From the IMG/VR virus record IMGVR_UViG_3300042340_000379, positions 124,001 through 188,000 of that record: 64,000 nucleotides of DNA. One strand, given 5' to 3'. Shown in pieces: positions 4,361 through 52,408 of the stretch (the first letter of the stretch is position 1; each line of letters opens with the position of its first letter). The position numbers were made by a program, and so were the translations under genes. Below the pieces are notes generated by a model. The model worked only from the letters and a program-made list of their open reading frames with translations. It was not told the origin of the DNA and did no database searches.

Positions 4361-7128
4361 TGGCGATACCCAAATTCCTGTTTGATTAGACGAACCATTC
4401 GTTCATACGCTTTAGGATGTGCTGGAAGCCACTCCCCCGTTTTCAGATAAATAAGTTGGGTAAAGAACTCGGGCAACTCCCCAAACATAAGATGCTCCGT
4501 GCTTTTTGTGAGAGTTGGTTCATTATTCTCAATCCAACTTACCAACTCTAGAGGATTCTCTATCAACTTTGTTGTATCAAGGGGCGTGTATAAAAGAGTG
4601 CTCATTGCCTCAGTTAAAGGAAGTTCTGTAATCCGTTCGACTATTTCGGGACTACACCCAGAGACACTTCGAACAAATTCTCTATCATTTACACCCATTG
4701 TCTCAAGAGTAGATGAGGTAGCGAGCTGAAATGACAGAGGTGCAGTTGCACCGACAGCTTTTAGAACCGAGGTTACTGATTGATTGTCCTTTACAGCTTT
4801 AACCTCTTTTGCAACCTGGGCCGGAATCCCATAACTTTCAAGGAATGCTTCTAGTGGATTTTTTGATGTAGAAGTGTCATAAATAGGGTTTGGGAGAGAT
4901 GGGGAGATCGGGTTAGTTGTAATCGCGCCAACTAGATTTGAGGGCCACTCGCTAAAGTCAGCAATGTTAAAGTTCTCTTTATTCTGAATAGGAATTTTAC
5001 CTACATCAAGATAACCGTCTTTCTTAATAGAAGAGGCATGACAACTAACGTCAAAAGACGGAATCTGGTATTGCTCAGCAGCTGGGATAGACGGAGAGAT
5101 AGACGCATCCTCACCAAACGCTGAAAGACATTCAAGTGTGGATAAAAGAAGAGGAATAGGAGAGCCCTGGCGAGTTTCAGATAAGTTTAGCTCAGGCCAC
5201 TCTCCAAGATACCCACCTCTATTAAGAGTCTCATCTTCAGACTCTGACGGCTCGAGCTGGTCATAAGGAAGTGCAACCTCAAATGTAGTAGAAGCTAAGA
5301 AATCTTGAATCAAGCCATCGGGCAAAAAATCTAAAACTCCCTGAATATTTAGACCCCCTACCGTTTTGGCAAGGTCAAGTCCTAACGTAAGATTACCTCC
5401 GTCTACTTTTGCTGAGAGCGGGCCTAAGGTTACGCCAGAAATCTTCCCGTCTTCAGAGCTAATTCCAAGTTGAAGCTGGGAGGGAAGCTTCTTATTTAAC
5501 TCAGCTACCCCAAAGTTATAGATCGCCTCGGGATTGATAAAGACAGAATTACCGTCTAAAGAAAATACGCCCTTTAGTTCAGCAGGCAGATAGTTAGTAA
5601 GAATCTGAAGCGCGGCCTCTGGGTTTTCCACTAAGCCAACAGCCATTTGAATCTTGGCAATTAACTGCTCAACAGAAAACGGCTTTGAAGTAATCGTCTG
5701 GTCTCCATACTCTAGTTGAGCTAGCTGTTGCAGCTCAATTGGAAGAGTGCATCTAAGGGCATCAATCGCAATTGTTACTGGGTTACCAATTGTCGTTTCT
5801 ACAACTAGAGCTTTGCCCTCTGAGATAAAAAGACCAGGCGTGATTCTAAGCGCTGTTACTCTATCTGAACCATAAGTTTCAAACTTAAGGCTGGCTGGAA
5901 GTCTATTGTTAAGACCCTTAAGACACTGAACAAGAGTAGAAGGAATCTCGCTATAGGTATCGTTAGTAGTAATCTCAAATCCGCAGACGGTTAAGCGATT
6001 GGCAGTGTAAACAAAAGCTTCTTCGGCAAGAGCCTCATTGATTTTGGCTATGCCTTGACTAATGTCTAAAGTTAAATCTAAAGTTTTGAGATCTAAAGTA
6101 GTAACGCCAACCGTTGCGCGTTGATCCGACTTTCCAAATAAAAGATCCTTTATCTTTAGTGCTTTAGGAAGCCATTTGTTAAGCTTAGCCATCACATCCA
6201 CTACTCCACCCAGCCCAGCTTCCTGAGTTAGATTTTGGACTAATCCAGCCACAGGGTTGTCAGTTGTACCAGACCAGGCATCCGCCGCTAAGTTCTGAAG
6301 AAGACAGTAAACAACCTCTCGATATTTCTCATTTAGAATAGGAAGCTCAATCAACTGTTCTAAAACGTTAACCCATCCAGAATCAGCGGGGCTAGCCTGA
6401 ATCTCATTGACCTCGGTTGAGCCATCCAGCAGATTTATCCCTAGCGTGCCATCATAGATGTGGTTATAGTTTGTGACTGCTTCCCGAAGCGCGATCTCTC
6501 CCATTAAACGGTTAGTTGTTGTTGAAAACGCGCCCGTGTTTTGGGTAACCGTTTGATTCTCAGCAATGACCTCTGTACCTACAGAGACATGATAGTTAGT
6601 CGCCGTTTGGTTAGCGAAGAACATCTGGTTAGCAGGCATTTCAAGATTAAGTTGGGTGCCCTCATTATCTGGTTTAGGAATATAAGATATGAATGTTAAA
6701 CCATCCATACTCACCGCCGCTGGGGCTAGCCAAGGTGATGAGACTACAGGAAGATCAGTTCCAAGTTGAAGGGCCCCTTCACCCACTTCATCATTCCCGC
6801 CATGCTGAAAAATCTCGCCCAGGCGGACAGACATGCTTTGCCCCACCTCACCCGTTACAAGCCTAGCACCCGGCCTCGGTGGCGGCGGCAGGAAGCCTCC
6901 TCCATTAAATAGACCAAAGCCCGTTTGGTTAACTTGCCTTAGACCTGACGGGGGTTCAGATGCTAAATATTTGCCATAATAAATATGCTCAGGAGATTGA
7001 AGCGCTTGAGCCATGCGAATATGAAGAGGATATCCCTGGCCCACACGAGCCTGCATGGATCGATGCTTCTGATAGAAGCCCAAGTTCTGCCCGCCAACTG
7101 AGCGCTGGCTGTCGGAGATAGAAGTCAT
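4357..7128 (-). CDS. Large baseplate/central-spike-like protein
   Basis: 923 aa; N-terminal GGGFLPPPPRPGARLVTG resembles the gp5/gpV OB-fold P..G..V motif; next minus-strand gene after the hub gene. Confidence 0.45.
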   Translation of the reverse strand: MTSISDSQRSVGGQNLGFYQKHRSMQARVGQGYPLHIRMAQALQSPEHIYYGKYLASEPPSGLRQVNQTGFGLFNGGGFLPPPPRPGARLVTGEVGQSMSVRLGEIFQHGGNDEVGEGALQLGTDLPVVSSPWLAPAAVSMDGLTFISYIPKPDNEGTQLNLEMPANQMFFANQTATNYHVSVGTEVIAENQTVTQNTGAFSTTTNRLMGEIALREAVTNYNHIYDGTLGINLLDGSTEVNEIQASPADSGWVNVLEQLIELPILNEKYREVVYCLLQNLAADAWSGTTDNPVAGLVQNLTQEAGLGGVVDVMAKLNKWLPKALKIKDLLFGKSDQRATVGVTTLDLKTLDLTLDISQGIAKINEALAEEAFVYTANRLTVCGFEITTNDTYSEIPSTLVQCLKGLNNRLPASLKFETYGSDRVTALRITPGLFISEGKALVVETTIGNPVTIAIDALRCTLPIELQQLAQLEYGDQTITSKPFSVEQLIAKIQMAVGLVENPEAALQILTNYLPAELKGVFSLDGNSVFINPEAIYNFGVAELNKKLPSQLQLGISSEDGKISGVTLGPLSAKVDGGNLTLGLDLAKTVGGLNIQGVLDFLPDGLIQDFLASTTFEVALPYDQLEPSESEDETLNRGGYLGEWPELNLSETRQGSPIPLLLSTLECLSAFGEDASISPSIPAAEQYQIPSFDVSCHASSIKKDGYLDVGKIPIQNKENFNIADFSEWPSNLVGAITTNPISPSLPNPIYDTSTSKNPLEAFLESYGIPAQVAKEVKAVKDNQSVTSVLKAVGATAPLSFQLATSSTLETMGVNDREFVRSVSGCSPEIVERITELPLTEAMSTLLYTPLDTTKLIENPLELVSWIENNEPTLTKSTEHLMFGELPEFFTQLIYLKTGEWLPAHPKAYERMVRLIKQEFGYRQ

Positions 7129-8804: not shown

Positions 8805-9103
8805 AAGCATTACAAAAAATGGGCTACAGAGAAATGAAGGAAGGCCTCTGGGGAAAGCCTATTGGTCACTCAATTCTTATCTATAGAATAAAGGAAAAAA
8901 CTCTTTATCACCAAACAGTTGGAATAACAGATCGGCCTATTACTTGGGATAGCCAAAATATCGACTATGAAGTCGAGAACTTTCTAGAACTCATCCAAAA
9001 TACTGAGGCTGAGTTTGCTATGGGCAGCGGAATGTCCTATCACCAACCGCATGATTTGAGCTTTTTAACTCAAAGAGAAGTTATAGAAACACTACTTCAA
9101 TAA
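8801..9103 (+). CDS. Hypothetical protein
   Basis: 100 aa, coupled to the previous gene, converges on the hub gene. Confidence 0.6.
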   Translation: MKALQKMGYREMKEGLWGKPIGHSILIYRIKEKTLYHQTVGITDRPITWDSQNIDYEVENFLELIQNTEAEFAMGSGMSYHQPHDLSFLTQREVIETLLQ

Positions 9104-12100
9104 GGACTCAGTAATACAAGCTCACTAGTCCATCCCTGGCTACCTGCCGAGTTTAGCGTATGCCGTACACCCTCGATTCTCCAAATAGATCGAGGGTCTT
9201 GCGTGAACCCAGACTTTCGCCAGTGATTCTCGCCCCACTCTTCAGTTGTCGCTGCTGCGTTATCTCCCTCAGTATCCTTTTCTACAACCGTGGCTGTTTC
9301 TTTTTTAGTGGCAGAGCAAAAGATGTCCTCAGCGCTCTTCTTAAACTCAGCTTTTCTAGCCCTAATTTTATAGTCTTCATCAACTCGCTCATAGCCGTCA
9401 GGTGAAGGTTCAGATGAATAGTTCCCTGTAAGAGGGGCTGAAGTCTCAGCTCTAGATTCAATTCCCTGGCGCGTAACTTCTAATGCACTCAGGTAACTAG
9501 CACGAGTCGCGCCTTCATACTCAACAATAGACTGTCGCTCATCAATATAAGTCTGAAGAGTCTGAGAGTAAATAGGTGAGTTAATAGTTTGAACCAGCTC
9601 GCCAGGGGTTAACGAAGCATCACCTAACACAGTCATTGATGCCGTGCGCAACTCTTTAGCATAGAGACGAGCAACTGAAGCTGCAACCGCTGCCGCCTCT
9701 CCAATATTTTTGATCGTCTCGTCAACAATGTACATGTTGCGGCCACCAATTTCATGTCCTCGAAGAAACGCGGGCCTGGCTGACATGTGCATAATAATCG
9801 CGTCACCGGCCACACTCCCGTTAGGAGATTGGTTAGCAATAAAGAAGTTAGTCTTCATACCAAGAGAGGACAGCTCTTCTTTGAAGTTGATCGTCATCTG
9901 GTTGTAATCAACCTGGCCAAAGATGCGACTGTAGTCAAACGTTTGGGTAAACTCGCAACCTTCAGTCTCTAGCCTTTCTATAATGGACTCAAACGAGGGC
10001 TTAGGAATGCTACCAGAAACCTGCGGGGGAATAGTACGGTGGTAGTACGTCCTGTAAAATCGCTTAGGGTCAGCTAAGCCTGAAACATCATTTACTCTAG
10101 GGGTGTAATAGAACTGCCCGTCAAGATGGTTCATAAAAGTCTCAGTTGGGTAAGGTTCCTGAGCTGAGAGAACTCGAATAAACTCAATCGGAATCTGAGT
10201 TTCAATTGAGAAATCTTTGCTGATAATATCAACCGAGTAGGGTAATCGCCCGGTAAAGATGTTAAACCTCATTTCTGAGTCTAGGTCTAATAACTCTTTT
10301 GGGTTAGAAGTGCGAGCGCGGCAAGGGATAATATCTTTAGAAAATTCGTTTTTACATGTGTAGAAAAAGTCGGGGCGTTTTGCTTCTGTTAAAGGTCTAA
10401 CAAATGAATAACCTCCCGGCCCGCTAGAGCTTTCAGAAGGAGAACCTGTAAATGTGGGATCAGCACCTCCTAAATGGCTACCTAAAAAGTCATAAATTTG
10501 TTGAGGGGTTTTAGTTCCTTGACTAGGGTAACAAAAAGATCCATTGCTTCTTGGAATGCTGGCCCACTCACAAGCAATTTTATCTAGCACAGTAGGCCAG
10601 TCTTGTTTAAGAACCGCGTCATAAGCCCCTCTTTGTTTAAGAAGATCGATCGCAGCTTTGTCTTGATTCTCAGGACTAAAAGATGTCAAGCCCAATTTGC
10701 GAACTAGCCCATCCCAAGTTCTTATAAGAAATTGATATCGACCACTAGCAGATGACCGTAATCCAGTTCCTAAAATCTGGCGAGGGTGATCGCGATAGCC
10801 ATTATTAAATAAACGGCCAGTATACTGAACGTTGTAACCTCGATCACTTCCAGCTATTGTGCTAGTACCCTCTGCCCACGCGATCATATCTAACACCGCA
10901 CGAAGATTTGGGTCAGAAGTTCCTGACGCAGTTGTTGGTTGAGATGGCTGGGGAGTTGGTGTGGGTGCTGCTTGAAGTGCTTCTCCTCCAGACCCAAGTT
11001 CTACATTATAAACAGCAGGGTCTTGATGAAGCATCTGCAAAGAGACACCATCTGGAAAAGTGACTGCGGTGTAAAGGCCTCCACCACCCCGATCACTAAT
11101 TACTCCAGAAATCTTTTCTATAGGAACAGTTGAACGAATCTCTGTTCCTATAGAAGCTGCATAATCGATACCATAGTGCTTGCGTCCGTACCTCGCAGTT
11201 CTGCCAGGGTTTCTAGTCCAGTGTTCAGATGTAATTTGGACACTACCTAAAGGAACTCCATTTAAGGCAATACGGTTGGCATGTTCGTCTGTTACTCTAT
11301 TTCTGCTCGGGTCATAAGAGCGGGCGTATTGAAGATGGAGGTGAGGCCCTGTACCAACACCTGTTTGACCTGTGATTCCTAATAAAGCTCCAGTCCCAAC
11401 AGTCGCAGCACCCCCTCCACCTCTTAAAGCATTACCAGAACTACTGTTGTACTGAACATAAAAGCCCAAATCTTGAATAAAGCCCTTCTTAATAACTCGG
11501 CCATTTAGATTGCAGTCGTCAGTCTCACCTTGAATAGCAACATGGCCAATTCCCAACTGGGAAATCTTTAGGATCAAATCTGACCGCAAGACATTCTCGT
11601 TTCCTTTTGCAAATGCTTTTGCGAGTGTGCTAGCGTTCTTGTCATTACCGTATGATGGATCAAATGTTACTTCGCTATCAGACAGGTAACGAACACGATC
11701 TCGACACTGGATTGTTAATGAGATACCCTTTGGCGTTCCTATGGCTGCGATTGTGTCGATCACGCCAATATAGTTTCGTAAAAGAAGGGAGTTTTCTAGA
11801 TCCTCAGGAGCGACAGGTCGCATTGTCGGCAAATAGCCCATCCAAACGCAAATTTCATCCTCAGGGCCGAGTCTTGAAAGAACTTCCTCGTTGTCAATTT
11901 TCTTTTTGTAAAGAGGTAGTTCAGGTGGCATATCATGAACTGAAGTCAAGTTACATGACAATGAAATTGTTGCCGTCGAACTTGCAAAAAATCTCTGTTG
12001 ATAAACCGTCGCACTACTAATTACCCATTGGGAGGGCTCAGAATGAACGTTCGAGAATAAGATCTGAGTATGGTCAAGACTCGTGATCGCCCAAACCGGG

Positions 12101-12171
12101 ATAGCACCCTGACTTCTCATGTGACATTTATCCCCAAGGGTTGGATCGAATCTCGGTTCGGGAATACTCAT
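9097..12171 (-). CDS. Baseplate hub (gp27/gpD-like) tail-associated lysin with inserted M23 peptidase and lambda-type lysozyme domains
   Basis: Hub motifs GVIDTI...LTIQCRD and ASMTVLGDASLTPGE...WRIEGVRHTL...GWTSELVL. M23 motifs HYGID and GTGPHLH. Lambda lysozyme motifs LRAVLDMIAWAEGT, SASGRYQFL..TW, FSPENQD and EWASIP. Confidence 0.85.
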   Translation of the reverse strand: MSIPEPRFDPTLGDKCHMRSQGAIPVWAITSLDHTQILFSNVHSEPSQWVISSATVYQQRFFASSTATISLSCNLTSVHDMPPELPLYKKKIDNEEVLSRLGPEDEICVWMGYLPTMRPVAPEDLENSLLLRNYIGVIDTIAAIGTPKGISLTIQCRDRVRYLSDSEVTFDPSYGNDKNASTLAKAFAKGNENVLRSDLILKISQLGIGHVAIQGETDDCNLNGRVIKKGFIQDLGFYVQYNSSSGNALRGGGGAATVGTGALLGITGQTGVGTGPHLHLQYARSYDPSRNRVTDEHANRIALNGVPLGSVQITSEHWTRNPGRTARYGRKHYGIDYAASIGTEIRSTVPIEKISGVISDRGGGGLYTAVTFPDGVSLQMLHQDPAVYNVELGSGGEALQAAPTPTPQPSQPTTASGTSDPNLRAVLDMIAWAEGTSTIAGSDRGYNVQYTGRLFNNGYRDHPRQILGTGLRSSASGRYQFLIRTWDGLVRKLGLTSFSPENQDKAAIDLLKQRGAYDAVLKQDWPTVLDKIACEWASIPRSNGSFCYPSQGTKTPQQIYDFLGSHLGGADPTFTGSPSESSSGPGGYSFVRPLTEAKRPDFFYTCKNEFSKDIIPCRARTSNPKELLDLDSEMRFNIFTGRLPYSVDIISKDFSIETQIPIEFIRVLSAQEPYPTETFMNHLDGQFYYTPRVNDVSGLADPKRFYRTYYHRTIPPQVSGSIPKPSFESIIERLETEGCEFTQTFDYSRIFGQVDYNQMTINFKEELSSLGMKTNFFIANQSPNGSVAGDAIIMHMSARPAFLRGHEIGGRNMYIVDETIKNIGEAAAVAASVARLYAKELRTASMTVLGDASLTPGELVQTINSPIYSQTLQTYIDERQSIVEYEGATRASYLSALEVTRQGIESRAETSAPLTGNYSSEPSPDGYERVDEDYKIRARKAEFKKSAEDIFCSATKKETATVVEKDTEGDNAAATTEEWGENHWRKSGFTQDPRSIWRIEGVRHTLNSAGSQGWTSELVLLSPY

Positions 12172-12215
12172 CTAATAATCTATTCATAAATATACTTTGA
12201 CCTTAACTGCCTAAG

Positions 12216-12244
12216 TTGCAAGCTAAGTGCGCAAGGTATATAGT
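12216..12244 (+). promoter_or_regulatory. Sigma70-type promoter P1 of repeat RNA 1
   Basis: TTGCAA-17 bp-TATAGT. Confidence 0.65.
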
Positions 12245-12249
12245 AGAGA

Positions 12250-12360
12250 AGTCGCCTCCGCTCTCCTCTGCTCACCTCGACTCAGCTCAGCTCTTCTCCA
12301 CTCGACTCAACTCGGCGTTTTGCAAACCCTCAGTCCTAACCGGCTGGGGGTTTGGCCTTT
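12250..12360 (+). ncRNA. Putative small RNA 1: (CUC-NN)12 array plus 3' hairpin
   Basis: 12 perfect CTCNN pentamers at 12256-12315; stem CAAACCCTCAGTC/GGCTGGGGGTTTG at 12323-12354. Confidence 0.6.
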
Positions 12361-12403
12361 CTACCCCTTTATGTAAAGCAGGCTCGCCACCCAGCCAAGC
12401 AGC

Positions 12404-12433
12404 TTGCACCTAGTCGCGGCAGTGTGTTAGATT
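12404..12433 (+). promoter_or_regulatory. Sigma70-type promoter P2 of repeat RNA 2
   Basis: TTGCAC-18 bp-TAGATT with extended -10 TGn. Confidence 0.55.
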
Positions 12434-12437
12434 GTTC

Positions 12438-12576
12438 AAGTCAGCTTCGGTTGACAAAAACCGCCTCTTCTCGGCTCAACTCCACTCTGCTCTACTCGAC
12501 TCAACTCAACTCGACGTAGCCTGAAAATGGCTAAAGAAACCCCAGGAAGTTTAGGCCTCCTGGGGTTTCTACTTTG
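12438..12576 (+). ncRNA. Putative small RNA 2: 5' cUUCGg hairpin, (CUC-NN)10 array, 3' terminator-like hairpin
   Basis: GTCAGC-TTCG-GTTGAC at 12440-12455; 10 CTCNN units at 12465-12514; AGAAACCCCAGGA/TCCTGGGGTTTCT stem at 12535-12570. Confidence 0.65.
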
Positions 12577-12602
12577 TATCTACTCTGGGCTTTTAGGCCC
12601 AG

Positions 12603-12631
12603 TTGTCGTTCTGAAGATTACAAACTAGAAT
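12603..12631 (+). promoter_or_regulatory. Sigma70-type promoter P3 of repeat RNA 3
   Basis: TTGTCG-17 bp-TAGAAT. Confidence 0.6.
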
Positions 12632-12635
12632 TGAA

Positions 12636-12735
12636 AAGTGCTTAGGCACAGCGTCTCAACTCAACTCGGTTCATCTCAACTCGACTCCCCTCATCTCCAC
12701 TCAACGCAACTCGTCTGCCTGGGAAGGCTGTTAGA
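12636..12735 (+). ncRNA. Putative small RNA 3: 5' hairpin, (CUC-NN)12 array, short 3' hairpin
   Basis: GTGC-TTAG-GCAC at 12638-12649; 12 pentamers at 12655-12714 (two variant triplets, TTC and CGC); GCCT-GGGA-AGGC at 12717-12728. Confidence 0.6.
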
Positions 12736-12764: not shown

Positions 12765-13502
12765 CTAAAGAGCGAAAGTGTTTCCGTTTTGCAAAGCCCA
12801 AGTAGGCCGAGCATCATTAACAATAGTGGCCTGGTTATAAAATACAGAGTTTGTATTCTGACTGTCCGCAGGCGTAAAGGGATTACCAACAACAGTCCCG
12901 GCCCACACAGACGAGGAATCGACGTAACTGATCCCTTCAGCCAGGCCTTCCCAACGAACAGCAATTACTGAACGTCCGGCCATCGCGCCGATAGTCATAC
13001 TGTCAACTTTACAATAGACCAATCTATATTGGCCGACCGAGTGACGCCGACGACGGGAGTTATCATTTCCGTTGACTAGCAGTTCGCCAAGATTATTGTT
13101 CCGAAGATCAACGTTGTTGAGTGACCGTTCGTCAAGTTCAGGTGCAGAAAGATCAAAGGTGATTACCATCCTTGGGCTGCGACCAATGCGCATTTCACGA
13201 CGAATGTCATCAAAGCCAAAGGTAGACTCTAGAAGACGGGTGTCAATAAGACCCCGTTCTAAAACCCAACCGAACTGAAATTCACCATCAAGCATTCGGG
13301 GAATGCGTTGGTTAAATTCCATGTAAGGCTCAGTCGCGTTTCGGATAGTTAGCTGGATGCTGGTAAAGCGCCCAACTAAAAGCTGGTTGCCGGTCGCTTG
13401 GTCAATGACCCAGACATCGGCGTCAAAGCCCTGCATTGGATCCTTAATAGAATTATTAATCGCGGCCCCAGCAGGGGAAGAATTTGCTGTGAAAATTGCC
13501 AT
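12765..13502 (-). CDS. Tail tube protein
   Basis: 245 aa directly downstream of the sheath; beta-strand pattern of tube proteins (VGRFTSIQLTI, FGWVLERG, YRLVYCKVDS, VRWEGLAEG). Confidence 0.7.
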   Translation of the reverse strand: MAIFTANSSPAGAAINNSIKDPMQGFDADVWVIDQATGNQLLVGRFTSIQLTIRNATEPYMEFNQRIPRMLDGEFQFGWVLERGLIDTRLLESTFGFDDIRREMRIGRSPRMVITFDLSAPELDERSLNNVDLRNNNLGELLVNGNDNSRRRRHSVGQYRLVYCKVDSMTIGAMAGRSVIAVRWEGLAEGISYVDSSSVWAGTVVGNPFTPADSQNTNSVFYNQATIVNDARPTWALQNGNTFAL

Positions 13503-13542: not shown

Positions 13543-16500
13543 TTACTGGGTTTGCAGGCTCAGGGAATCTGCAATTTCTCGGGTAACGCTGACCCTGATA
13601 AAGTCAGCCGGGTATACTGGCGTGTAGAGCAACGCGATGTTTAGAATGCCCTGAGAGATAGTGGTTGGTGTGTTGTTACTTTCGTTACAAATCGTGTTTC
13701 GGAAGCTCGAGATTCGCCCTTCACGGGTCAGGCTTTGAAGATAGGCGTCAACCGCAACTGCTACCTGGGCTCTTAAAGAAGTGGTGTTCCTATTTGAGCG
13801 AACCCACACTAGATTAAGATACAGGTCGTGAAGAATTTGGTCAGCCATCCGTCGCACAGAGACGTACCGATCACTACTGTTAGAAGTAGTTGACAAACCA
13901 TTTAGAAACTTATAGACTCCAAGGCCCGCGTCGTAGAAGAGAACTTCAGTCCGAGCGCGAGTGACGGCATCCAGATAGGTTGTGTTTGAAGGAGTGTCAA
14001 CAGAAACGACGCCATTTGGAACCATTCCCTCGCCAGCAGCAGCGGGAGATATTTCAGGAGGGTTAGCTGCCAACAAACCTACATAAAAGCCAGCCCCAGG
14101 AGTATTGTTAAAACCGCTAACTCCAGCCATTGAGGTGTGCCCACCAACCAAAACAATTCGAGGATTGTTCTGGGCAGAGGCTAAGCTCAAAGCTTGAGTC
14201 CCAGAAAGATTACGGGGGGCTTGAATAACACCCGTTCTTAGACCAGTAGAAACATTAGCCCGATTGACCTGGCCAATAATCTCTTCGGTCACGCCCGAGA
14301 AGTTACGGTCGCCCGCATCATACCCAGCGGCATATAAGATTGAAATATCTTGACCTTCTAGCTCCTGAACAGCCTGGCGAAGAATAGCAGCTCGATCGGC
14401 AGCAGGCAAACTTGCAACAACAGTGTCTTGGCCTTCACTCAAGTAAATATTTTGGAGATAAGAATCACCAAAAGCCGCTTGAGCATAAAGAGGAAGAGAG
14501 AACGAGCTGGTAGATTGGTTTGCGGTATTAAAGACAGGAATGCGATCGCCATAAGACGGCGCAAGTCGAACAGGAACTTTATTTAGTTCTAGTTCAGTCA
14601 ACTCTTTACCATCAACAGCGGGTAGATAGTAACAACGAACCAGTCGGCTATTAGCCGAGGCGTTAAACAAACCGTCAGTTTCAACATCCCGAGTCGAAAG
14701 CGCCATCGTTTCCGAACCAGGAACATTTTGGTAAGAAGAACTATCTTCATCTAAAACAAAGAGAGTAAACTGACCGTCCCGTCCGGGGGTGACACTAACC
14801 TTAAGCTTATTGCCGTAAGCACCTTCTGATAAGGCTACAACTCGAAGCAGTGGGTCAGAATCAATAGAGTAGAAATCTTGATAAGCAGCGCTGGAACCAT
14901 CAATCGCCCCACTAAACCTTAGATCCGCTCCATACTTAGAGTTGGAATCGGAAATGTTGCTAGAGTTAAACAAAAGGTCATCAGCAGTAACACCAGAAGA
15001 CACCCCCTTAACTTCGCGAGTTAGAGTAGCCCGAATGCGATTTGCGTCAGTGCCTGTATACCCGGTGGCAAGACTCAGAGTTGGGGGATTCAAGTTAGCC
15101 GAAATAATAGGCTCTCTAAGAAGACCCATCATCATCGCGTCAAGTTCAATCGCTTCTTTTAGTTCAGTGAGAATTTGGGAAGCTGTCATACCAACCGAGA
15201 AGTCTTGCTCGCCAGCAGCAGAACCTAAAGCTACGGAAGCATAGGCAACAGGAACGTTAAACGTACCCCCCTTAAGAAACGCAATCTTATTAGAGGTCGA
15301 AATGCCTGGTAGGTCAACTTGAATGCCAGACGAGGGAGCAAAGATAACTCCATCTTCACGCTCAAACAGAATGCGATTGTCAAAATTGTTAGCTTGAACA
15401 GCTTCAGTTGAAACAAGAAATGCGTCAACAAGAGCGTTGCGGTCGTCTACCTCAAAAGCAGTCTGAATGAATTTATACTCTAGAGGATCAGAAACTGTGC
15501 CGACAGTAGTTGCGGCAACAGGGCCAGAAAGAGTACCAGAAATAGTAGCCGATGAAACAGAGGCAGGAGTTTGAGTGCCAACTGTAAATTTTGACCCGTT
15601 GGAAAAGTTAATTTCAAAGCCGGGGTCAAGTCGGTAAGGAACAGATGCTACAGAAAGAGAAACAGCTCCGTTTATCGCGTTTGAAGAAACAGTAACGCTA
15701 GCCGAAGGATTTTTTACGTACTCTGGGAGACCGCCAGATCTTGCCCTAAATGTGGAAGAGAAGATGTAGAGATTCTTAGAAGTTTCGTAGAGAGAAACCG
15801 AAGCGTTAGTCAGAACGGTCGCGATCTGCCCTTTAACTAAAAACCGAACTCGGTTTGGGTTAGAAGGGTCATCAGCAGCAACTGACATTACCATCAAGGG
15901 AGTGCTAGAAGTGCTGTTAAAAACAACCGCTGAACCAGAGTACAAAAGCCGACCGGGCTTTAAGTTAGCAACAAAAGATTGGTTGCTTTCTAAAGTGCGA
16001 TCAGCGTACATCCATTGAATCTGGTTCTCAACAGAACCAGAAACTGGAATATAAGTTGCAGGGGCGCTAACCGTCGCGGTTGATGAGATGATTTGCTCAA
16101 CAGATGGAATAGCGCCTTGGGGAATGATAACTCCAACAGAGGTTGAGCTTAAAACGCCTTTTAGAGAAACCGGGTTATTTGAGGGGTCAGCGTTTTCAGT
16201 TAGCTTAAAACTTGCGTTAGAAAAGTAGAGATAGCTGTCTTTTGCTAGACTAGTGCGAAGACTTGCAATCTCAAGAGTTTTAATCTGGCGAGCAGAATAA
16301 GTCGCGGCAGGTAGAGTGCCTGGATTTTTAGTGACGGTTGCAGTCGTTGCAGAAGCAATGGTAATTTGCATACCATTAGTTAAAACGTAAACTTGTCCAA
16401 CTACCGGAACACCGTCAACGTTAGTTAGAGTAGAAAGAGTTAAAACATCATTTAGAGCTAACGTTACGCTAGAAGCGAGAGTAAAGCCAATTGTGTTTGA

Positions 16501-17070
16501 CCGGCCAGTCAAAGCCGTCGAAACAACAAAACCAGGATCACCTTTCAAATACTCTTCAGCGACGTACTCAAAAAGACCCAGCCCATTGTAATCAACACTA
16601 CTAGGAAGAGCGCTAGTATCTCGAACGTTAAGTAAGCCAGCTGCCCGAACAGTCTCAAAGCTCTGGCCAACGTATCGAACATTCAGCTTTAGACCAGTAG
16701 TTTGAACTTGATTGCCAGCATTAAACTGCTGGATGTTGCCAATAAAACCAACTTGAGCTTGGTTAGTAGGAAGAACGTTGGCAAACTTTAGATCAAGAGT
16801 AGCTGCGGTAGCCCGAGGGGTAGCGCGAGAAATGACAATGTCAGTTGCACCTTGAAGTAGAACCTGACGAACAGCAACCGCACCAGGAGAGTTGTCATCT
16901 CCATAGAGATAGGCTGCATCTTGCCGGTTAGTAACTCGGACTGCACCACGAGGGCCTCGACGAAAAATACCGGCAATGCCCACCCGGTTGCGGTAGTTTG
17001 TATTGAATGGGATAGGCCCGACGAGAGTTTCCTGAAAACTAACGTTAGGAAAAGATAGTTGTTGGTTCAT
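13543..17070 (-). CDS. Contractile tail sheath protein, enlarged by a long insertion
   Basis: N-terminal FPNVSFQE..GIAGIFRRGP; ALSEGAYGNKLKVSV; C-terminal YVSVRR...AYLQSL...ICNESNNT...GILNIALLYTPVYPADFIRV. Confidence 0.9.
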   Translation of the reverse strand: MNQQLSFPNVSFQETLVGPIPFNTNYRNRVGIAGIFRRGPRGAVRVTNRQDAAYLYGDDNSPGAVAVRQVLLQGATDIVISRATPRATAATLDLKFANVLPTNQAQVGFIGNIQQFNAGNQVQTTGLKLNVRYVGQSFETVRAAGLLNVRDTSALPSSVDYNGLGLFEYVAEEYLKGDPGFVVSTALTGRSNTIGFTLASSVTLALNDVLTLSTLTNVDGVPVVGQVYVLTNGMQITIASATTATVTKNPGTLPAATYSARQIKTLEIASLRTSLAKDSYLYFSNASFKLTENADPSNNPVSLKGVLSSTSVGVIIPQGAIPSVEQIISSTATVSAPATYIPVSGSVENQIQWMYADRTLESNQSFVANLKPGRLLYSGSAVVFNSTSSTPLMVMSVAADDPSNPNRVRFLVKGQIATVLTNASVSLYETSKNLYIFSSTFRARSGGLPEYVKNPSASVTVSSNAINGAVSLSVASVPYRLDPGFEINFSNGSKFTVGTQTPASVSSATISGTLSGPVAATTVGTVSDPLEYKFIQTAFEVDDRNALVDAFLVSTEAVQANNFDNRILFEREDGVIFAPSSGIQVDLPGISTSNKIAFLKGGTFNVPVAYASVALGSAAGEQDFSVGMTASQILTELKEAIELDAMMMGLLREPIISANLNPPTLSLATGYTGTDANRIRATLTREVKGVSSGVTADDLLFNSSNISDSNSKYGADLRFSGAIDGSSAAYQDFYSIDSDPLLRVVALSEGAYGNKLKVSVTPGRDGQFTLFVLDEDSSSYQNVPGSETMALSTRDVETDGLFNASANSRLVRCYYLPAVDGKELTELELNKVPVRLAPSYGDRIPVFNTANQSTSSFSLPLYAQAAFGDSYLQNIYLSEGQDTVVASLPAADRAAILRQAVQELEGQDISILYAAGYDAGDRNFSGVTEEIIGQVNRANVSTGLRTGVIQAPRNLSGTQALSLASAQNNPRIVLVGGHTSMAGVSGFNNTPGAGFYVGLLAANPPEISPAAAGEGMVPNGVVSVDTPSNTTYLDAVTRARTEVLFYDAGLGVYKFLNGLSTTSNSSDRYVSVRRMADQILHDLYLNLVWVRSNRNTTSLRAQVAVAVDAYLQSLTREGRISSFRNTICNESNNTPTTISQGILNIALLYTPVYPADFIRVSVTREIADSLSLQTQ

Positions 17071-32771: not shown

Positions 32772-35700
32772 ATGGATCCCCTCTTCCCAGAATTAGACCC
32801 GGCTTTAATTGATAACCAGAACTCCGAAGTTCGAGAGCAAATCAGACGGTTAGAAAAATCAACCCCTGAAGATATTGCTCGCCAAGAGTTAACCACCCCT
32901 GACCTTAACTCCATAGGGATTAGTCGGGGGTTTAGACTTCACTACGGAGAAGTATCCGATCGCCCTGGCACACGCTACAACATGCTAGGGCAAAAGATCT
33001 ACGAACCACCGACTCTAGCAATGGAGTCTCAAGTTGGATTTTATGAGCCGGTCAGCGTTCGCGCCAACGTTTCTCTAGACCAATCCCTACAAGTTAGAGC
33101 TGTTAATGCAATCGACTCTATTAACTATGGACGTTCTGTATTAACTGGGCAGCAGCGAACTGTAACGAGTGGCTTAAACACTATGTTTGGGCGGCAGTTT
33201 AGAAGTTTAATGTATGACCAGCAAGTAAGAGCTGCCGGTCTTATGGGGTTAAGCCGAGAAGACACCCGCGCTCTTTTAGGAGAACCTGCAGTTAGAGAAG
33301 GGCTTTATCAAGACGCTGGCTTTAGAACACCCAGCCTTGAATCGATTATGGAGAATATGGGCACCGGGATGCCTAGCGCTGAACGCATCAGTGACATAAA
33401 TAGAATGGGCTTCTACGCCGATCGCTATGCAGATCCTGAGAGCGTTCAGAAACTTTATCGAGAAGTCAACCAACTAAAAAATGCCCTTGGCGATGGAATC
33501 AAATCTGTAGAAAAGCGCTATGCATACCGAAAAGTTAACGGCATGTACGAAAAAGTCCTTGTTGGCTTAAAGGTTGGAGTAAGAAATTACAATGACCTTT
33601 TTGACGGAATGGGTCTCTACAGCGGAACCAGCGCTCCTGCTGTTGAAAGAGAAACTGCTTTTAACTTTACTGTTGACTCTAAGGGCCAAGTAATTGAACT
33701 TAATACTAATAGGGTAATTAGTGGTTCGCTTATGGCCCTTGGGCCGTCCAGCATTTCTACTATTGTGGGTTCCTCTCTTATTGGAGGAGAAGGTCGCCGC
33801 CAAAGTAGTTCGGCTACAGCGCTGGGCCTTTTAGCTACTTACGCCAGGTCATCAGAGCTTGAAGCTCGGCACGGTGTTGTAGATGGTGTGTTTAACACCA
33901 TGATCGCACAAGGAGAATATGGTGCTCTTGGAAGAGTCTTTGCAGAAGCTCTTGTGTCTCGTAATGAGAAGTATGTCGCCAGCCGGGGCTTAAAATTTGG
34001 CGAAGTTGCTGGCCAAATGCTCAGCTCCGTCGGCCATAAAGATTTTAAGAAAGGTATTCATGAACTAATTGAGAGTATTTCCTATCGCGGTCTTGAGTAC
34101 TATTCCAGTCTCCATACTGTATTTAAGGAAAGCTTTGATGAAAACACAGCCCGCATGGAGCTGTTTAGAAACCGGCAGTCTCTTCTTACAGCTGCCTTTG
34201 ACCCTCTTCTAAATTACACGGGTGGGGAAGGCTCCAGATTTGATGGGTTAATTGACACCACAATGAAGCGGGTAGTTGACCTAATTCAATCTGATAGCAG
34301 TACCCAGCGGTTAAAAATTGCAGGTCAGGATGTAGACATTTCTCTATTTGATGACTTAAAAGTTGCGGCTTTAAACATGAGCCCAACAGGTCGAAGTGCT
34401 TACGACTTAAGAAAGAGTCAAGTCAGCCGCTCGATTCTGCAACTTATGATGTCGCCATTCCTAATGCCGCATGAGTCAGGCTACTCAGGGTCTCAGTCTT
34501 CCTCCCGCCTTGGATTGTTTGCCATGTCGGAAACTAGGGGTCAGCGGGGTATGTACGAGCTTTTTGCCATAAGCCCGTCAAAGCATACCCACGGAATGAA
34601 GAGCACAAAGCCTGGTGAGTACTACAAACCTATTGGCTCACAGAGCGCTAAAAGCTCTGTTATGAAATATATTGGCGGATTTTATAAATTTGACGACACT
34701 GCTGCTAAAGTAGCTGAGTTTTATGAGACAAAGACTTTATTTGCAGGTATGCCCTCATTAAAGCGTGCCAAGCTTGATGACATTCAGATTCACATGCAAA
34801 AAGCTGGATATAAAAGTTCTCGAGAGATTATCGAGAAGTATCGAGCAGAGATGCAGCTAAAAGAGGATAAAGATATTGAAGTTCTACTCATGCCATTTAG
34901 AAAGCCTGAGCAGATCTCCCAACGTCTTAAAAACTTGGTAGGGGGTAGACCCATGCTAGAAATAGCAACGGGTCTTCGCCGCGCAGTGATGAGCCAGAGT
35001 GGGCAGCAACTTCGAAGTTATTTCTCTGGAGGAGACTATGGCGTTTCCCTTGATGTGGGGAAAGCGTTAAGCGGCAACATTCCTGCCGCGCTAAATGACA
35101 TCCAGTATCAGCAGATGGAGCAAGAGAGATCGCGCATTATTGCTGAACTGGGTCTAGATGAAAAGAAAATAACGCCGAGACAGCAATCAGAGTTATCTCG
35201 TTTGCTAACCTCTCGTATGCGGGAAATTGAAACTCAGTTTAATGAAGGCGGCGGGTACATTCAAGGTAAAGCCGCTCGCTTAACCATGGTGGGCATGGGC
35301 GTGAACATGCTCTCTGACTTTATGCTCGTCAACCAGGAGTACGTCAACAACACAGCTTTTGGCTATCTACATCATTCCAAGTTTCGAGTTTCAGCTACTC
35401 AAAACGTTCGGTATGAAGGAGTGGGGCGAGTTACAGAAGCTGACCCTTATTTTGACTGGAAGACTAATCGCCTGGCGGAGGTGTTTAAAGCTGGTACCTC
35501 TATCTATCTATCACCTACCCCTCTAAAAAATGAGAGGGCAATGGAGATTCTTAAAAAGACCGCGCAAAGCATGAGGTCTGAGTTTCTTGCTCGAGGCATT
35601 AGCAAACGAGAGAGTGACGCGCAAGTAAGGCGCACGCTTCAAAGCAACTTCAAATTTTTAGAGAGCGTAGACATCAAAGATGGAGAAGTCACCAACGCAA

Positions 35701-52263: not shown

Positions 52264-52408
52264 GGGCCATAAAAGGCCCGACGCGGGCCCTAATCGGACT
52301 TTCTAGGGCCCTAAAGGGCCCAACGCGGGACGTGAAGGGCCCTTCACGGGACATAGACGGCCCGACGCGGGCCCTAAAGAGACCAAAAAGGGCCCGTGAA
52401 GGGCCCTA
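52264..52408. repeat. parC-like array 1: about 14 GGGCCC/GGGAC-type boxes at 10-11 bp spacing, upstream of parM
   Basis: gggccataaaa-ggcccgacgc-gggccctaatc-ggactttcta-gggccctaaa-gggcccaacgc-gggacgtgaa-gggcccttcac... Confidence 0.75.

What the first reader, a model, noticed from the sequence alone, without database searches (positions are those of the whole stretch)
13422..13457. Array 3 NN string, read with every third base skipped, partly matches the start of the tail tube gene
Seen in sequence: unit 3 gives AA.AA.GG.AT.AA.GA.CC.AT.CA.AA.AA.GT. Tail tube codons 16-27 (minus strand, 13457 to 13422) read AAt AAt TCt ATt AAg GAt CCa ATg CAg GGc TTt GAc. Eight of the first nine dinucleotides match (8 of 12 overall, six consecutive), and the skipped base is the wobble position. 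Inference: the RNA could target the homologous tube gene of a related competing phage, with the mismatches avoiding self-targeting, or tune its own gene. I found this by eye after trying several readings and the last three units do not match, so chance is not excluded.
Basis: partly seen in the sequence, partly recalled or inferred. Interest (0 to 1): 0.7.

Follow-up and report, generated by a model that had tools for sequence, protein, structure and literature searches.

The report
Orphan VIPR-type guide RNAs in cyanophage
Three small repeat arrays between the tail tube gene and the next tail gene of a 208-kb cyanophage look like guide RNAs of the recently described VIPR system, and one of them spells out, two letters per codon, the tube gene of a near-identical sibling phage but not quite the phage's own copy.

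Summary
The match is real as described: 8 of 12 dinucleotides, six consecutive, and the skipped base is the wobble position. On its own it is weak. Shuffled strings reach 8/12 somewhere in the genome in about 10% of trials, and 17/24 bases in 96%.

The context changes the picture. The three (CTCNN)10-12 arrays are the only period-5 arrays in the 208-kb genome. The same kind of array (CUC plus a variable NN) sits beside a ~190-aa Cas7-like protein in five cyanophage contigs and three cyanobacterial MAGs. By fold, that protein is Vipr of the VIPR system (bioRxiv 2026). In VIPR, the NN dinucleotides of pentanucleotide-repeat guide RNAs read double-stranded DNA with a one-nucleotide skip, usually at the wobble position.

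A near-identical sibling strain in another metagenome differs from the window at only four bases over 343 nt, and all four lie inside the site. Two of them turn codon 18 from TCT into GGT, which is the guide's "GG". This gives 9 of 9 matches for the first nine units.

The last three units probably belong to the RNA's tail. The genome has no recognisable vipr gene, no expression data were listed, and no perfect 12/12 target was found.

Verdict: a new variant of a known kind.

The parts
12216..12244 (+). Promoter-like site (TTGCAA, 17 nt, TATAGT) 11 nt upstream of repeat tract 1
12256..12315 (+).
12323..12362 (+). 3' hairpin (13-bp stem) followed by GCCTTTCT; a terminator-like tail for RNA 1
12404..12455 (+). 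Promoter-like TTGCAC, 17 nt, TTAGAT (12404-12432, found by eye) and a 5' hairpin (12440-12455), both upstream of tract 2
12465..12514 (+). Repeat tract 2: 10 x CTCNN, with NN = TT GG AA CA TG TA GA AA AA GA
12517..12602 (+). Tail of RNA 2: a small hairpin (12517-12533), a strong terminator hairpin with U tract (12536-12577; z = -4.1 for the whole RNA), and a second terminator-like hairpin (12585-12602)
12603..12649 (+). Promoter-like TTGTCG, 17 nt, TAGAAT (12603-12631) and a 5' hairpin (12638-12649), both upstream of tract 3
12655..12699 (+). Repeat tract 3, units 1-9, the probable guide: NN = AA AA GG AT AA GA CC AT CA (unit 4 has TTC in place of CTC)
12700..12714 (+). No terminator hairpin is predicted downstream.
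   Evidence: inference
13422..13457 (-). Codons 16-24 (13457-13432) match guide units 1-9 at 8/9. The X5 sibling strain has 13451 A>C, 13450 G>C, 13446 A>G and 13437 T>G (+ strand letters), which gives 9/9.
11930..11964 (+). Best genome-wide match of the tract 1 NN string (8/12, 18/24, skip = wobble), in codons 70-81 of the 1024-aa gene, on the strand opposite to the gene's sense strand. The evidence is fragile: 7/10 if the tract is cut at its CTC-AAC.
12765..13502 (-). Tail tube gene (245 aa): 42% identical to Ma-LMM01 gp092, which follows the sheath gene there; matches phrog_34837
13543..17070 (-). Tail sheath gene (1175 aa)
9097..12171 (-). 1024-aa tail-associated protein with lysozyme-like and M23 peptidase-like parts

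Best explanation
The 570-nt gap between the tube gene and the 1024-aa tail gene holds three small genes on the + strand, antisense to the structural operon. Each has a promoter-like site, a tract of 10-12 pentanucleotide repeats (a constant CUC plus a variable NN) and a 3' tail.

They are guide RNAs of the VIPR type (vrRNAs), in a variant whose constant triplet is CUC rather than GGY. In VIPR, a small Cas7-like protein (Vipr) coats the repeat tract. The NN dinucleotides pair with one strand of double-stranded DNA, skipping one target base per repeat (usually the codon wobble base). The bound complex represses the target, which is typically a competing phage.

Here the first nine NN of RNA 3 specify codons 16-24 of the tail tube gene. 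The match is perfect for the allele of a near-identical sibling strain (codon 18 GGT). It is broken at both bases of one unit in the phage's own allele (codon 18 TCT). The most likely function is therefore allele-specific interference with sibling phages, with the phage's own gene spared.

The genome has no vipr gene, so the protein would have to come from elsewhere: the host, a resident prophage or a co-infecting phage.

What is shown:
- the anatomy of the three arrays;
- the link between CUC/NN arrays and Vipr homologues in other genomes;
- the fold identity of that protein with the published Vipr seeds;
- the sibling polymorphism at the site.

What is inferred:
- that the three RNAs are transcribed;
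- that they are loaded onto a Vipr supplied in trans;
- that they bind DNA and that the double mismatch protects the own allele;
- that the guide ends after unit 9.
For: Anatomy:
- These are the only period-5 arrays in the 207,855-bp genome, and all three are on one strand.
- Promoter-like hexamers lie just upstream on the CTC strand, and strong hairpins with U tracts follow tracts 1 and 2.

Class:
- Clustered CTCNN arrays with variable NN occur in cyanophage contigs G001-G005 and in L149. Each array there has its own -10 box and terminator. G001 has ten in tandem, with near-identical flanks and unrelated NN strings.
- All five contigs encode one conserved ~190-200-aa protein next to the arrays on the same strand. 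It was the only protein family shared by all five.
- Its AlphaFold model (pLDDT 88.6) matches Cas7/Csm3.
- Its best AFDB-cluster hits are X1U2U4, A0A0F9A1L0, A0A661D0E2, A0A1F4YLN4 and A0A2D6XG06, the five Vipr seeds named in the preprint.
- 46 of 51 homologous loci in GTDB genomes carry period-5 arrays. The triplet reads CTC in all three cyanobacterial MAGs.

Rule:
- The one-nucleotide skip, wobble alignment, targets on either strand and competing phages as targets come from the preprint.

Target:
- The X5 contig covering 13216-13558 differs at four places, all within 13437-13451. Codon 18 changes from TCT to GGT, which equals guide unit 3; the other two changes are at skipped positions.
- The chance of all four differences falling in the 36-nt site is 1.2e-4. 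Counting at least 4 of that strain's 6 differences over 727 nt gives 8e-5. No permuted guide gave a run of nine units (0/3000).
- Under the nine-unit parse, the own allele is the unique best hit in the genome (P = 0.0023).
- The number of apparent units (10-12) lies within the published range of 9-16.
Against: - The genome has no Vipr or vap homologue, although it is estimated 97% complete. This holds for an HMM built from 21 homologues, for phrog_4652, for phrog_5926 and for hhalign against 148 ORFs.
- No RNA run was listed, so transcription, strand and RNA ends are predictions only.
- RNA 3 has no predicted terminator.
- The three tails are not alike, whereas vrRNA tails within one published locus are conserved.
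- Counted over all 12 units, the sibling allele reaches 19/24 (79%), just under the preprint's 80% criterion for natural targets.
- Under the nine-unit parse, the own allele is 89%. That would count as a self-target by the same criterion, and the preprint found no self-targets.
- The nine-unit boundary is soft, because any AA unit followed by CTC creates CTCAAC.
- The N-terminus of the tube protein is variable between close alleles anyway (P0122 differs at residues 6, 8, 15 and 19), so the clustering probability may be too optimistic.
- Tract 2 has no match, and the match of tract 1 does not survive re-parsing.
- Silencing a rival's structural gene would be complemented in a mixed infection, unless the carrier's own late genes are off or the bound complex also blocks replication or packaging.
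- CUC as the constant triplet is not mentioned in the preprint's text.
Confidence: 0.6

Rival explanations
1. The arrays are vrRNA-type guides, but the tube match is coincidence. Their real targets lie in other elements not sampled here, and the sibling polymorphism reflects ordinary variability of the tube N-terminus.
For: - At 12 units the match is chance-level genome-wide: 17/24 bases is reached by 96% of permuted strings, and 8/12 units by about 10%.
- The parse and the 'local' restriction that give small P values were chosen after the fact.
- P0122 shows that close alleles differ often within the first 20 residues.
- The same test on 14 arrays from other family members shows no general tendency to near-match neighbouring DNA (Fisher about 0.33).
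- Perfect 9/9 matches to unrelated AT-rich phages occur in IMG/VR at the number expected by chance.
Against: - All four differences of a 343-nt, otherwise identical sibling contig fall in the 36-nt site, and the two that are read by the guide change exactly to its GG.
- The best genome-wide hits of two of the three strings lie in the two flanking genes, which make up 1.8% of the genome.
Confidence: 0.25
2. Decoy: the orphan arrays are Vipr-binding mimics that soak up the Vipr protein of a rival phage or of the host. This would be an RNA anti-VIPR, analogous to RNA anti-CRISPRs, and the NN content would be irrelevant.
For: - There is no vipr or vap gene in the genome.
- There are three independently promoted copies.
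- The tails are not conserved.
- G001-type VIPR promoters and arrays are present in the same metagenome as the sibling strain (loose end in X5).
Against: It does not explain the 9/9 match to the sibling allele or the clustering of differences in the site. Nothing here tests binding.
Confidence: 0.07
3. Self-regulation: RNA 3, and perhaps RNA 1, bind the phage's own tube and 1024-aa genes imperfectly and tune or time late-operon transcription.
For: - The own allele is 8/9 units (16/18 bases) under the nine-unit parse, above the preprint's 80% line.
- The best own-genome hits of tracts 1 and 3 lie in the two flanking genes.
- The arrays sit inside the operon they would regulate.
Against: - The preprint found no self-hits at or above 80% among the roughly 200 vrRNAs it checked against their own contigs, and reports that disturbing NN pairing abolished silencing.
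- The sibling allele matches better than the own allele, which is the pattern expected for sparing, not tuning.
- The arrays are absent from all more distant relatives that have the same gene order.
Confidence: 0.06
4. The minus strand is the RNA. In that case (GAGNN)10-12 in the operon transcript would be a binding site for a TRAP-like ring protein, as in the Bacillus trp leader.
For: On the minus strand the arrays read GAG plus 2 nt, 10-12 times, with GAGUU commonest. That is the consensus TRAP site (my own knowledge of TRAP). They would lie within the sheath-tube operon transcript.
Against: - In the related loci each array has its own promoter and terminator on the CTC strand and lies on the vipr strand.
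- On that strand the triplet varies by lineage (GGC, GAC, CGC, CTC and others), matching the published GGY orientation.
- There is no TrpBP domain in the genome.
- TRAP is a Bacillus-group protein.
Confidence: 0.02

Closest known systems
VIPR systems (Vipr RAMP protein, vap accessory protein and vrRNAs); bioRxiv 10.64898/2026.04.26.720920, dated 2026-06-25
   Same: - Phage-borne tandem pentanucleotide repeats (9-16 units) with a constant triplet and hypervariable NN.
- Each RNA is about 100 nt, and there are several per locus.
- NN is read against DNA with a one-nucleotide skip that falls on the wobble position.
- Targets can be on either strand.
- Targets are closely related competing phages.
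- The own genome is spared.
   Different: - The constant triplet is CUC, not GGY or the NNNGG, YNNNG and NNNNG variants named in the text.
- There is no vipr or vap gene in the genome.
- The cassette lies inside the tail operon, antisense to it, rather than flanking vipr in an early region.
- The three tails are unlike each other.
- The best natural target found reaches 79% (12 units) or 100% (9 units).
Virus-borne mini-CRISPR arrays without cas genes (Medvedeva et al., Nat Commun 2019) and cas-less CRISPR arrays in cyanophage N-1. Recalled from my own knowledge; not checked here.
   Same: - Guides carried by a virus that lacks the effector and relies on one made by the host.
- Spacers aimed at near-identical sibling viruses.
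- The carrier's own site differs by a few bases.
- The proposed role is exclusion of relatives.
   Different: - Those use contiguous spacers between CRISPR repeats and Cas effectors.
- Here the guide is a gapped dinucleotide code and the effector would be a single Vipr protein.
TRAP (MtrB) binding sites: 11 (G/U)AG triplets separated by 2-3 nt. From my own knowledge.
   Same: A five-nucleotide period, a constant triplet, free spacers, and about 11-12 units that are bound one per protein subunit.
   Different: The triplet is on the other strand. The partner is a RAMP filament rather than an 11-mer ring. The spacers carry information. There is no TrpBP domain in the genome.
RNA anti-CRISPRs (Racr; repeat mimics that sequester Cas proteins). 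From my own knowledge.
   Same: Phage-borne, effector-less RNAs that resemble the guide scaffold of a defence system.
   Different: This is only a rival reading here. The NN content appears to be meaningful.

Membership tests
VIPR vrRNA | Tandem pentanucleotide repeats, 9-16 units, with a constant triplet alternating with a hypervariable NN | tested here: met
   There are 12, 10 and 12 apparent units. Across 22 related arrays (306 units) all 16 dinucleotides occur, and adjacent identical NN are not enriched (18 observed against 20.4 expected).
VIPR vrRNA | The constant motif is GGY (YNNGG), or NNNGG, YNNNG or NNNNG | tested here: not met
   The constant triplet is CUC. However, CUC/NN arrays accompany Vipr homologues in G001-G005, L149, L240, L251, L253, L269 and L277. 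On the vipr strand the triplet differs by lineage: GGC, GAC, CGC, CTC, GTC, GTT, CAC and ATT.
VIPR system | A vipr gene (a small RAMP with a G-loop and thumb) next to the arrays | tested here: not met
   Nothing was found in the 207,855-bp genome (97% complete by CheckV) with the A1 profile, phrog_4652 or hhalign. A Vipr type too divergent for sequence methods is not excluded.
VIPR system | A vap accessory gene | tested here: not met
   No phrog_5926 match and no match to the profile of 'protein B'. The other five vap families were not tested.
VIPR vrRNA | Expressed as a discrete RNA of about 100 nt that co-purifies with Vipr | not testable with these tools
   No RNA run was listed. The only evidence is promoter-like and terminator-like sites on the CUC strand.
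VIPR vrRNA | An invariable, structured 3' tail after the repeat tract | tested here: inconclusive
   RNAs 1 and 2 end in strong hairpins; RNA 3 does not (z = 0.16). The three tails are unlike each other. Tails also differ between CUC-type lineages (AAC..., TTGCAA..., AGCTTT...).
VIPR vrRNA | A natural target with at least 80% NN match under the one-nucleotide skip rule, skip on the wobble position, in a competing element, and no self-hit at or above 80% | tested here: inconclusive
   The sibling allele scores 19/24 (79%) over 12 units or 18/18 over 9 units. The own allele scores 17/24 (71%) or 16/18 (89%). The skip falls on the wobble position. No convincing target was found for tracts 1 and 2.
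TRAP-binding leader | (G/U)AG repeats on the transcribed strand, together with a TrpBP-domain protein | tested here: not met
   The orientation evidence favours the CTC strand. PF02081 is absent.
Diversity-generating retroelement (variable repeat derived from a (CTCAA)n template) | A template repeat with adenines at the variable positions, together with a reverse transcriptase | tested here: inconclusive
   There is no (CTCAA)n template array in the genome; only the three arrays exist. A reverse transcriptase was not searched for. The idea was dropped once the Vipr link was found.

The most novel reading that the evidence does not exclude
A virus carries only the guides of a VIPR system and borrows the Vipr protein from its host, a prophage or a rival. 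The guide cassette is placed between the genes it targets, so each guide stays genetically linked to the resistant allele of its own target (a poison-antidote or homing-like arrangement). This drives allele-specific exclusion between sibling cyanophages. The TCT/GGT polymorphism at codon 18 of the tube gene would then be the first escape or target polymorphism for VIPR seen in a natural population. CUC would be one of many lineage-specific constant triplets that co-evolve with Vipr.
Probability: 0.35. Interest if true: 0.8.

Novelty: new variant of a known kind. Interest (0 to 1): 0.64.

Why it matters
VIPR was described only in mid-2026, from proteobacterial phages and by searching outward from the protein. 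This window adds several things.

- A guide-only cassette with no effector gene, which protein-centred searches cannot find.
- A constant triplet (CUC) outside the published consensus.
- A broader pattern: across 46 Vipr loci the triplet changes with lineage, which suggests protein-RNA co-evolution that could be exploited for orthogonal tools.
- A natural pair of near-identical phage strains that differ almost only at the predicted target, one matching the guide and one not. That pair is a ready-made test of how many NN mismatches protect a site.
- An extension of the system to freshwater cyanophages related to Ma-LMM01.

Tried and rejected
- **TRAP-like GAG-repeat RNA on the minus strand.** This was my first idea. 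I rejected it on orientation and on the absence of a TrpBP domain.
- **Rfam.** Nothing passed at gathering threshold. The weak His_leader and NsiR1 hits are only the terminator hairpins.
- **Replication slippage as the source of NN diversity.** Adjacent identical units are not enriched.
- **DGR-like adenine mutagenesis of a (CTCAA)n template.** There is no template array. I dropped the idea once the Vipr link was found.
- **Translation of the arrays.** There are no start codons. The CTC strand is stop-free in all three frames simply by construction.
- **Relatives found through the tube protein.** IMG/VR, JGI metagenomes and GenBank phages gave 14 distant homologues, none with arrays within 4 kb and none matching better than 6/12.
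- **Target hunts in IMG/VR with partial patterns for tracts 1, 2 and 3.** These gave only chance-level hits. L232 is an isolated 37-nt similarity. The 9/9 hits for tract 3 are in AT-rich contigs that are not cyanophage-like.
- **Exact search for the sibling allele in IMG/VR.** None was found.
- **Validating the skip rule on Vipr-linked CUC guides.**
  - Locally, in 2.3 Mb of collected sequence, no skip length stood out.
  - In IMG/VR, one G001 guide gave nothing. One G004 guide gave a single 24/26 hit in an unrelated phage, with the skip on codon position 2, which is ambiguous.
- **Tract 1.** Its 8/12 match to the 1024-aa gene looked striking (local in-frame P = 1.5e-4). It falls to 7/10 (P = 0.74) if the tract is cut at its CTC-AAC, so I do not rely on it.
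- **RNA runs.** None was listed.
Full report
**1. What is at the coordinates**

The window is part of a 207,855-bp single-contig virus record. CheckV estimates it as 97% complete.

- The octamer GCGATCGC (the HIP1 repeat typical of cyanobacteria, from my own knowledge) occurs 37 times in the genome.
- The sheath gene is 13543..17070 (-) and the tube gene is 12765..13502 (-). The tube protein is 42% identical to Microcystis phage Ma-LMM01 gp092.
- The window therefore belongs to a freshwater cyanomyovirus assembled from lake metagenomes.

Codons 16-27 of the tube gene read AAT AAT TCT ATT AAG GAT CCA ATG CAG GGC TTT GAC. The NN string of array 3 is AA AA GG AT AA GA CC AT CA AA AA GT. That gives 8/12 dinucleotides, six in a row, with the skipped base at codon position 3.

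**2. Is it more than chance?**

Taken alone, no.

- Permuted or resampled strings reach 8/12 somewhere in the genome in 4.5-11% of trials.
- By counting bases, 17/24 is reached by 96% of permuted strings.

One thing looked odd. The NN string of array 1, read the same way, has its single best genome-wide hit (8/12, 18/24, skip on the wobble) in the other flanking gene, at 11930-11964. Restricting to in-frame sites within 3 kb gives P = 1.5e-4 for array 1 and 4.5e-4 for array 3. That restriction was chosen after seeing the data, and the array 1 result later proved fragile (section 5).

**3. What the arrays are**

The three (CTCNN)10-12 tracts at 12256-12315, 12465-12514 and 12655-12714 are the only period-5 arrays in the genome. 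On the minus strand they read GAGNN, which first suggested a TRAP-type protein-binding RNA.

A pattern scan of IMG/VR settled the strand. Most hits were plain microsatellites, but a few contigs had clusters of CTCNN arrays with variable NN. In those contigs each array has a -10 box a few bases upstream and a GC-rich hairpin with a U tract downstream, both on the CTC strand.

Contig G001 has ten such units in tandem. Their promoters and terminators are almost identical, while their NN strings are unrelated and their lengths range from 12 to 25 units.

The window shows the same layout on its + strand:
- promoter-like hexamers before all three tracts (12216-12244 and 12603-12631 from the scan, 12404-12432 by eye);
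- strong terminator hairpins after tracts 1 and 2;
- no terminator hairpin after tract 3.

**4. The partner protein and the literature**

An all-against-all comparison of the six array-bearing genomes found one protein family shared by all five of the other contigs. It is encoded right next to the arrays on the same strand.

- It is about 190-200 aa, has no Pfam domain and matches phrog_4652. More than 3,300 relatives exist in metagenomes.
- Its AlphaFold model (pLDDT 88.6) is a ferredoxin-like fold with a C-terminal glycine-rich loop.
- Foldseek places it with Cas7/Csm3 of type III and type VII CRISPR systems.

[quoted passage not shown] It describes VIPR as follows:
- a ~20-kDa ancestral RAMP protein (Vipr), an accessory protein (vap), and ~100-nt vrRNAs made of 9-16 pentanucleotide repeats with constant GGY and hypervariable NN;
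- the NN dinucleotides pair with double-stranded DNA with a one-nucleotide skip that mostly falls on the codon wobble position;
- targets can lie on either strand, and no PAM is needed;
- natural targets are competing phages, satellites and prophages;
- natural targets were called at 80% NN match or above, and no self-hits reached that level.

The top AFDB-cluster matches of my model are exactly the five UniProt entries that the preprint names as its Vipr seeds. The neighbouring protein is therefore Vipr, and the cyanophage CUC/NN arrays are vrRNAs with a different constant triplet.

In GTDB genomes, 46 of 51 loci with a Vipr homologue carry period-5 arrays. Read on the vipr strand, the triplet is lineage-specific: GGC, GAC, CGC, CTC, GTC, GTT, CAC or ATT. 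It is CTC in all three cyanobacterial MAGs (Allocoleopsis, Microcoleus, Pantanalinema).

**5. The target**

Distant tube homologues do not match better than the window's own gene.
- Fourteen alleles with 37-68% amino-acid identity give 4-6/12.
- A 93%-identical allele (P0122) gives 7/12.

The decisive observation came from laying the contigs of four other metagenome runs on the site. Run X5 holds a strain whose 343-nt contig (13216-13558) differs from the window at only four bases.
- All four lie between 13437 and 13451, inside the site.
- Two of them change codon 18 from TCT (Ser) to GGT (Gly). GG is the dinucleotide of guide unit 3, the only mismatch among the first nine units.
- The other two fall on skipped (wobble) positions.
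- Elsewhere in the tube gene the same strain shows 1 difference in 144 nt and 1 in 277 nt.

The statistics are as follows.
- The chance that all four differences fall in the 36-nt site is about 1e-4.
- The chance that the two informative changes hit the guide's bases adds a further factor of about 1/9.
- Against the sibling allele the guide gives nine consecutive units. No permuted guide did so in 3,000 trials.

The three units that match nothing (CTCAA CGCAA CTCGT) begin with CTC-AAC. That is the boundary immediately following the repeat tract in 17 of the 27 Vipr-linked CUC arrays I examined. They also contain a degenerate triplet, CGC. I infer that the guide has nine units and that the tail starts there.

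Under that parse:
- the own allele is the unique best hit in the genome (8/9 units, 16/18 bases; P = 0.0023 and 0.02);
- the sibling allele is 18/18;
- array 1, cut the same way, drops to 7/10 (P = 0.74), so I do not build on it;
- array 2 has no match by any measure.

**6. What is missing**

- The genome has no recognisable vipr or vap gene.
- No RNA data were listed.
- RNA 3 lacks a predicted terminator, and the three tails differ from each other.
- Searches of IMG/VR for better targets found only what chance predicts, and the sibling allele is not in IMG/VR.
- An attempt to validate the rule on two Vipr-linked CUC guides gave one ambiguous hit.

The X5 data show that the ~90% strain there carries different arrays at this locus. 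The 5' part of tract 1 is replaced, an extra unit is present, and a different array follows position 12650. A G001-type VIPR promoter with its array also occurs in the same sample. Guide cassettes therefore differ between close strains, and Vipr-encoding cyanophages share the habitat.

**7. Mechanism proposed**

The three + strand genes would make guide RNAs that load onto a CUC-type Vipr supplied by the host, a prophage or a co-infecting phage. RNA 3 would then direct binding to codons 16-24 of the tube gene of sibling phages carrying GGT at codon 18. The carrier would be spared by the double mismatch.

The closest analogue in logic is the virus-borne mini-CRISPR array without cas genes that targets sibling viruses (recalled from my own knowledge, not checked here). 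Placing the guides between their targets would keep each guide and its resistant allele linked.

One weak point is that silencing a structural gene can be complemented in a mixed infection. The effect would be clearest if the carrier's own late genes are silent, or if the bound complex also blocks replication or packaging.

**8. Verdict**

The reading rule and the 'competitor's allele' idea hold up. RNA-RNA targeting, a 12-unit target and a self-contained system do not.
- The class has been known since June 2026. This instance is a new variant: a CUC triplet, guides only, inside the tail operon, with a natural target polymorphism.

Noticed in passing
L129:7400-8872 (contig G001, IMGVR_UViG_3300042561_001378): Ten tandem vrRNA genes. 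Their extended -10 promoters and terminators are nearly identical, but their NN strings are unrelated and they have 12-25 units. There are two alternative 3' end types (...CTCGA CTC AACCGAA... and ...CTCGT CTCGC CTCAG CTC AGCACAAGGC...).
   Followed up: partly
L240-L290 (51 loci with Vipr homologues in GTDB genomes): 46 of 51 loci have period-5 arrays. The constant triplet on the vipr strand changes with lineage (GGC, GAC, CGC, CTC, GTC, GTT, CAC, ATT) and almost always ends in C. This suggests that Vipr and its repeat scaffold co-evolve.
   Followed up: partly
L151:4640-5000 and 5587-5670; L065:3856-3928(-) and 5661-5743(+): In some VIPR loci the arrays have no terminator. They end 15-25 nt before the start codon of vipr, vap or another gene, so they lie in the 5' leaders.
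   Followed up: partly
window 12166-12270, 12305 and 12650 onward, as seen in run X5: A ~90% related strain has the promoter and first units of tract 1 replaced by 110 other bases, an extra 5-nt unit after 12305, and a different array after 12650. The guide cassettes turn over faster than the flanking genes.
   Followed up: partly
window 12675-12713, as seen in runs X3 and X6: Contigs of 3.4 kb and 2.9 kb share 34 of 39 nt with units 5-12 of tract 3 but differ on both sides. Another element carries a partly identical repeat tract.
   Followed up: no
L293:267-305: The 13-unit guide of contig G004 matches 24/26 NN bases inside a 196-aa ORF of an unrelated AT-rich phage contig. By eye the ORF resembles an XkdF-type protease; I did not test this. 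The skipped base is codon position 2, not the wobble position.
   Followed up: partly
window 52264-52378: A tandem repeat of a 21-nt unit (GGGCCCTAAACGGCCCGACGC), 5.5 copies, 64% matches.
   Followed up: no
window 32772-42854 and 55493-60982: Two very large ORFs on the + strand, 3360 aa and 1829 aa. Neither was annotated here.
   Followed up: no
window 11652-12020 (+): A 122-aa ORF antisense to the start of the 1024-aa gene overlaps the near-match of tract 1. It is probably spurious.
   Followed up: no
window 12531-12644: Weak Rfam hits (His_leader 32 bits, NsiR1 20 bits), both below threshold. They are due to the terminator hairpins between tracts 2 and 3.
   Followed up: yes
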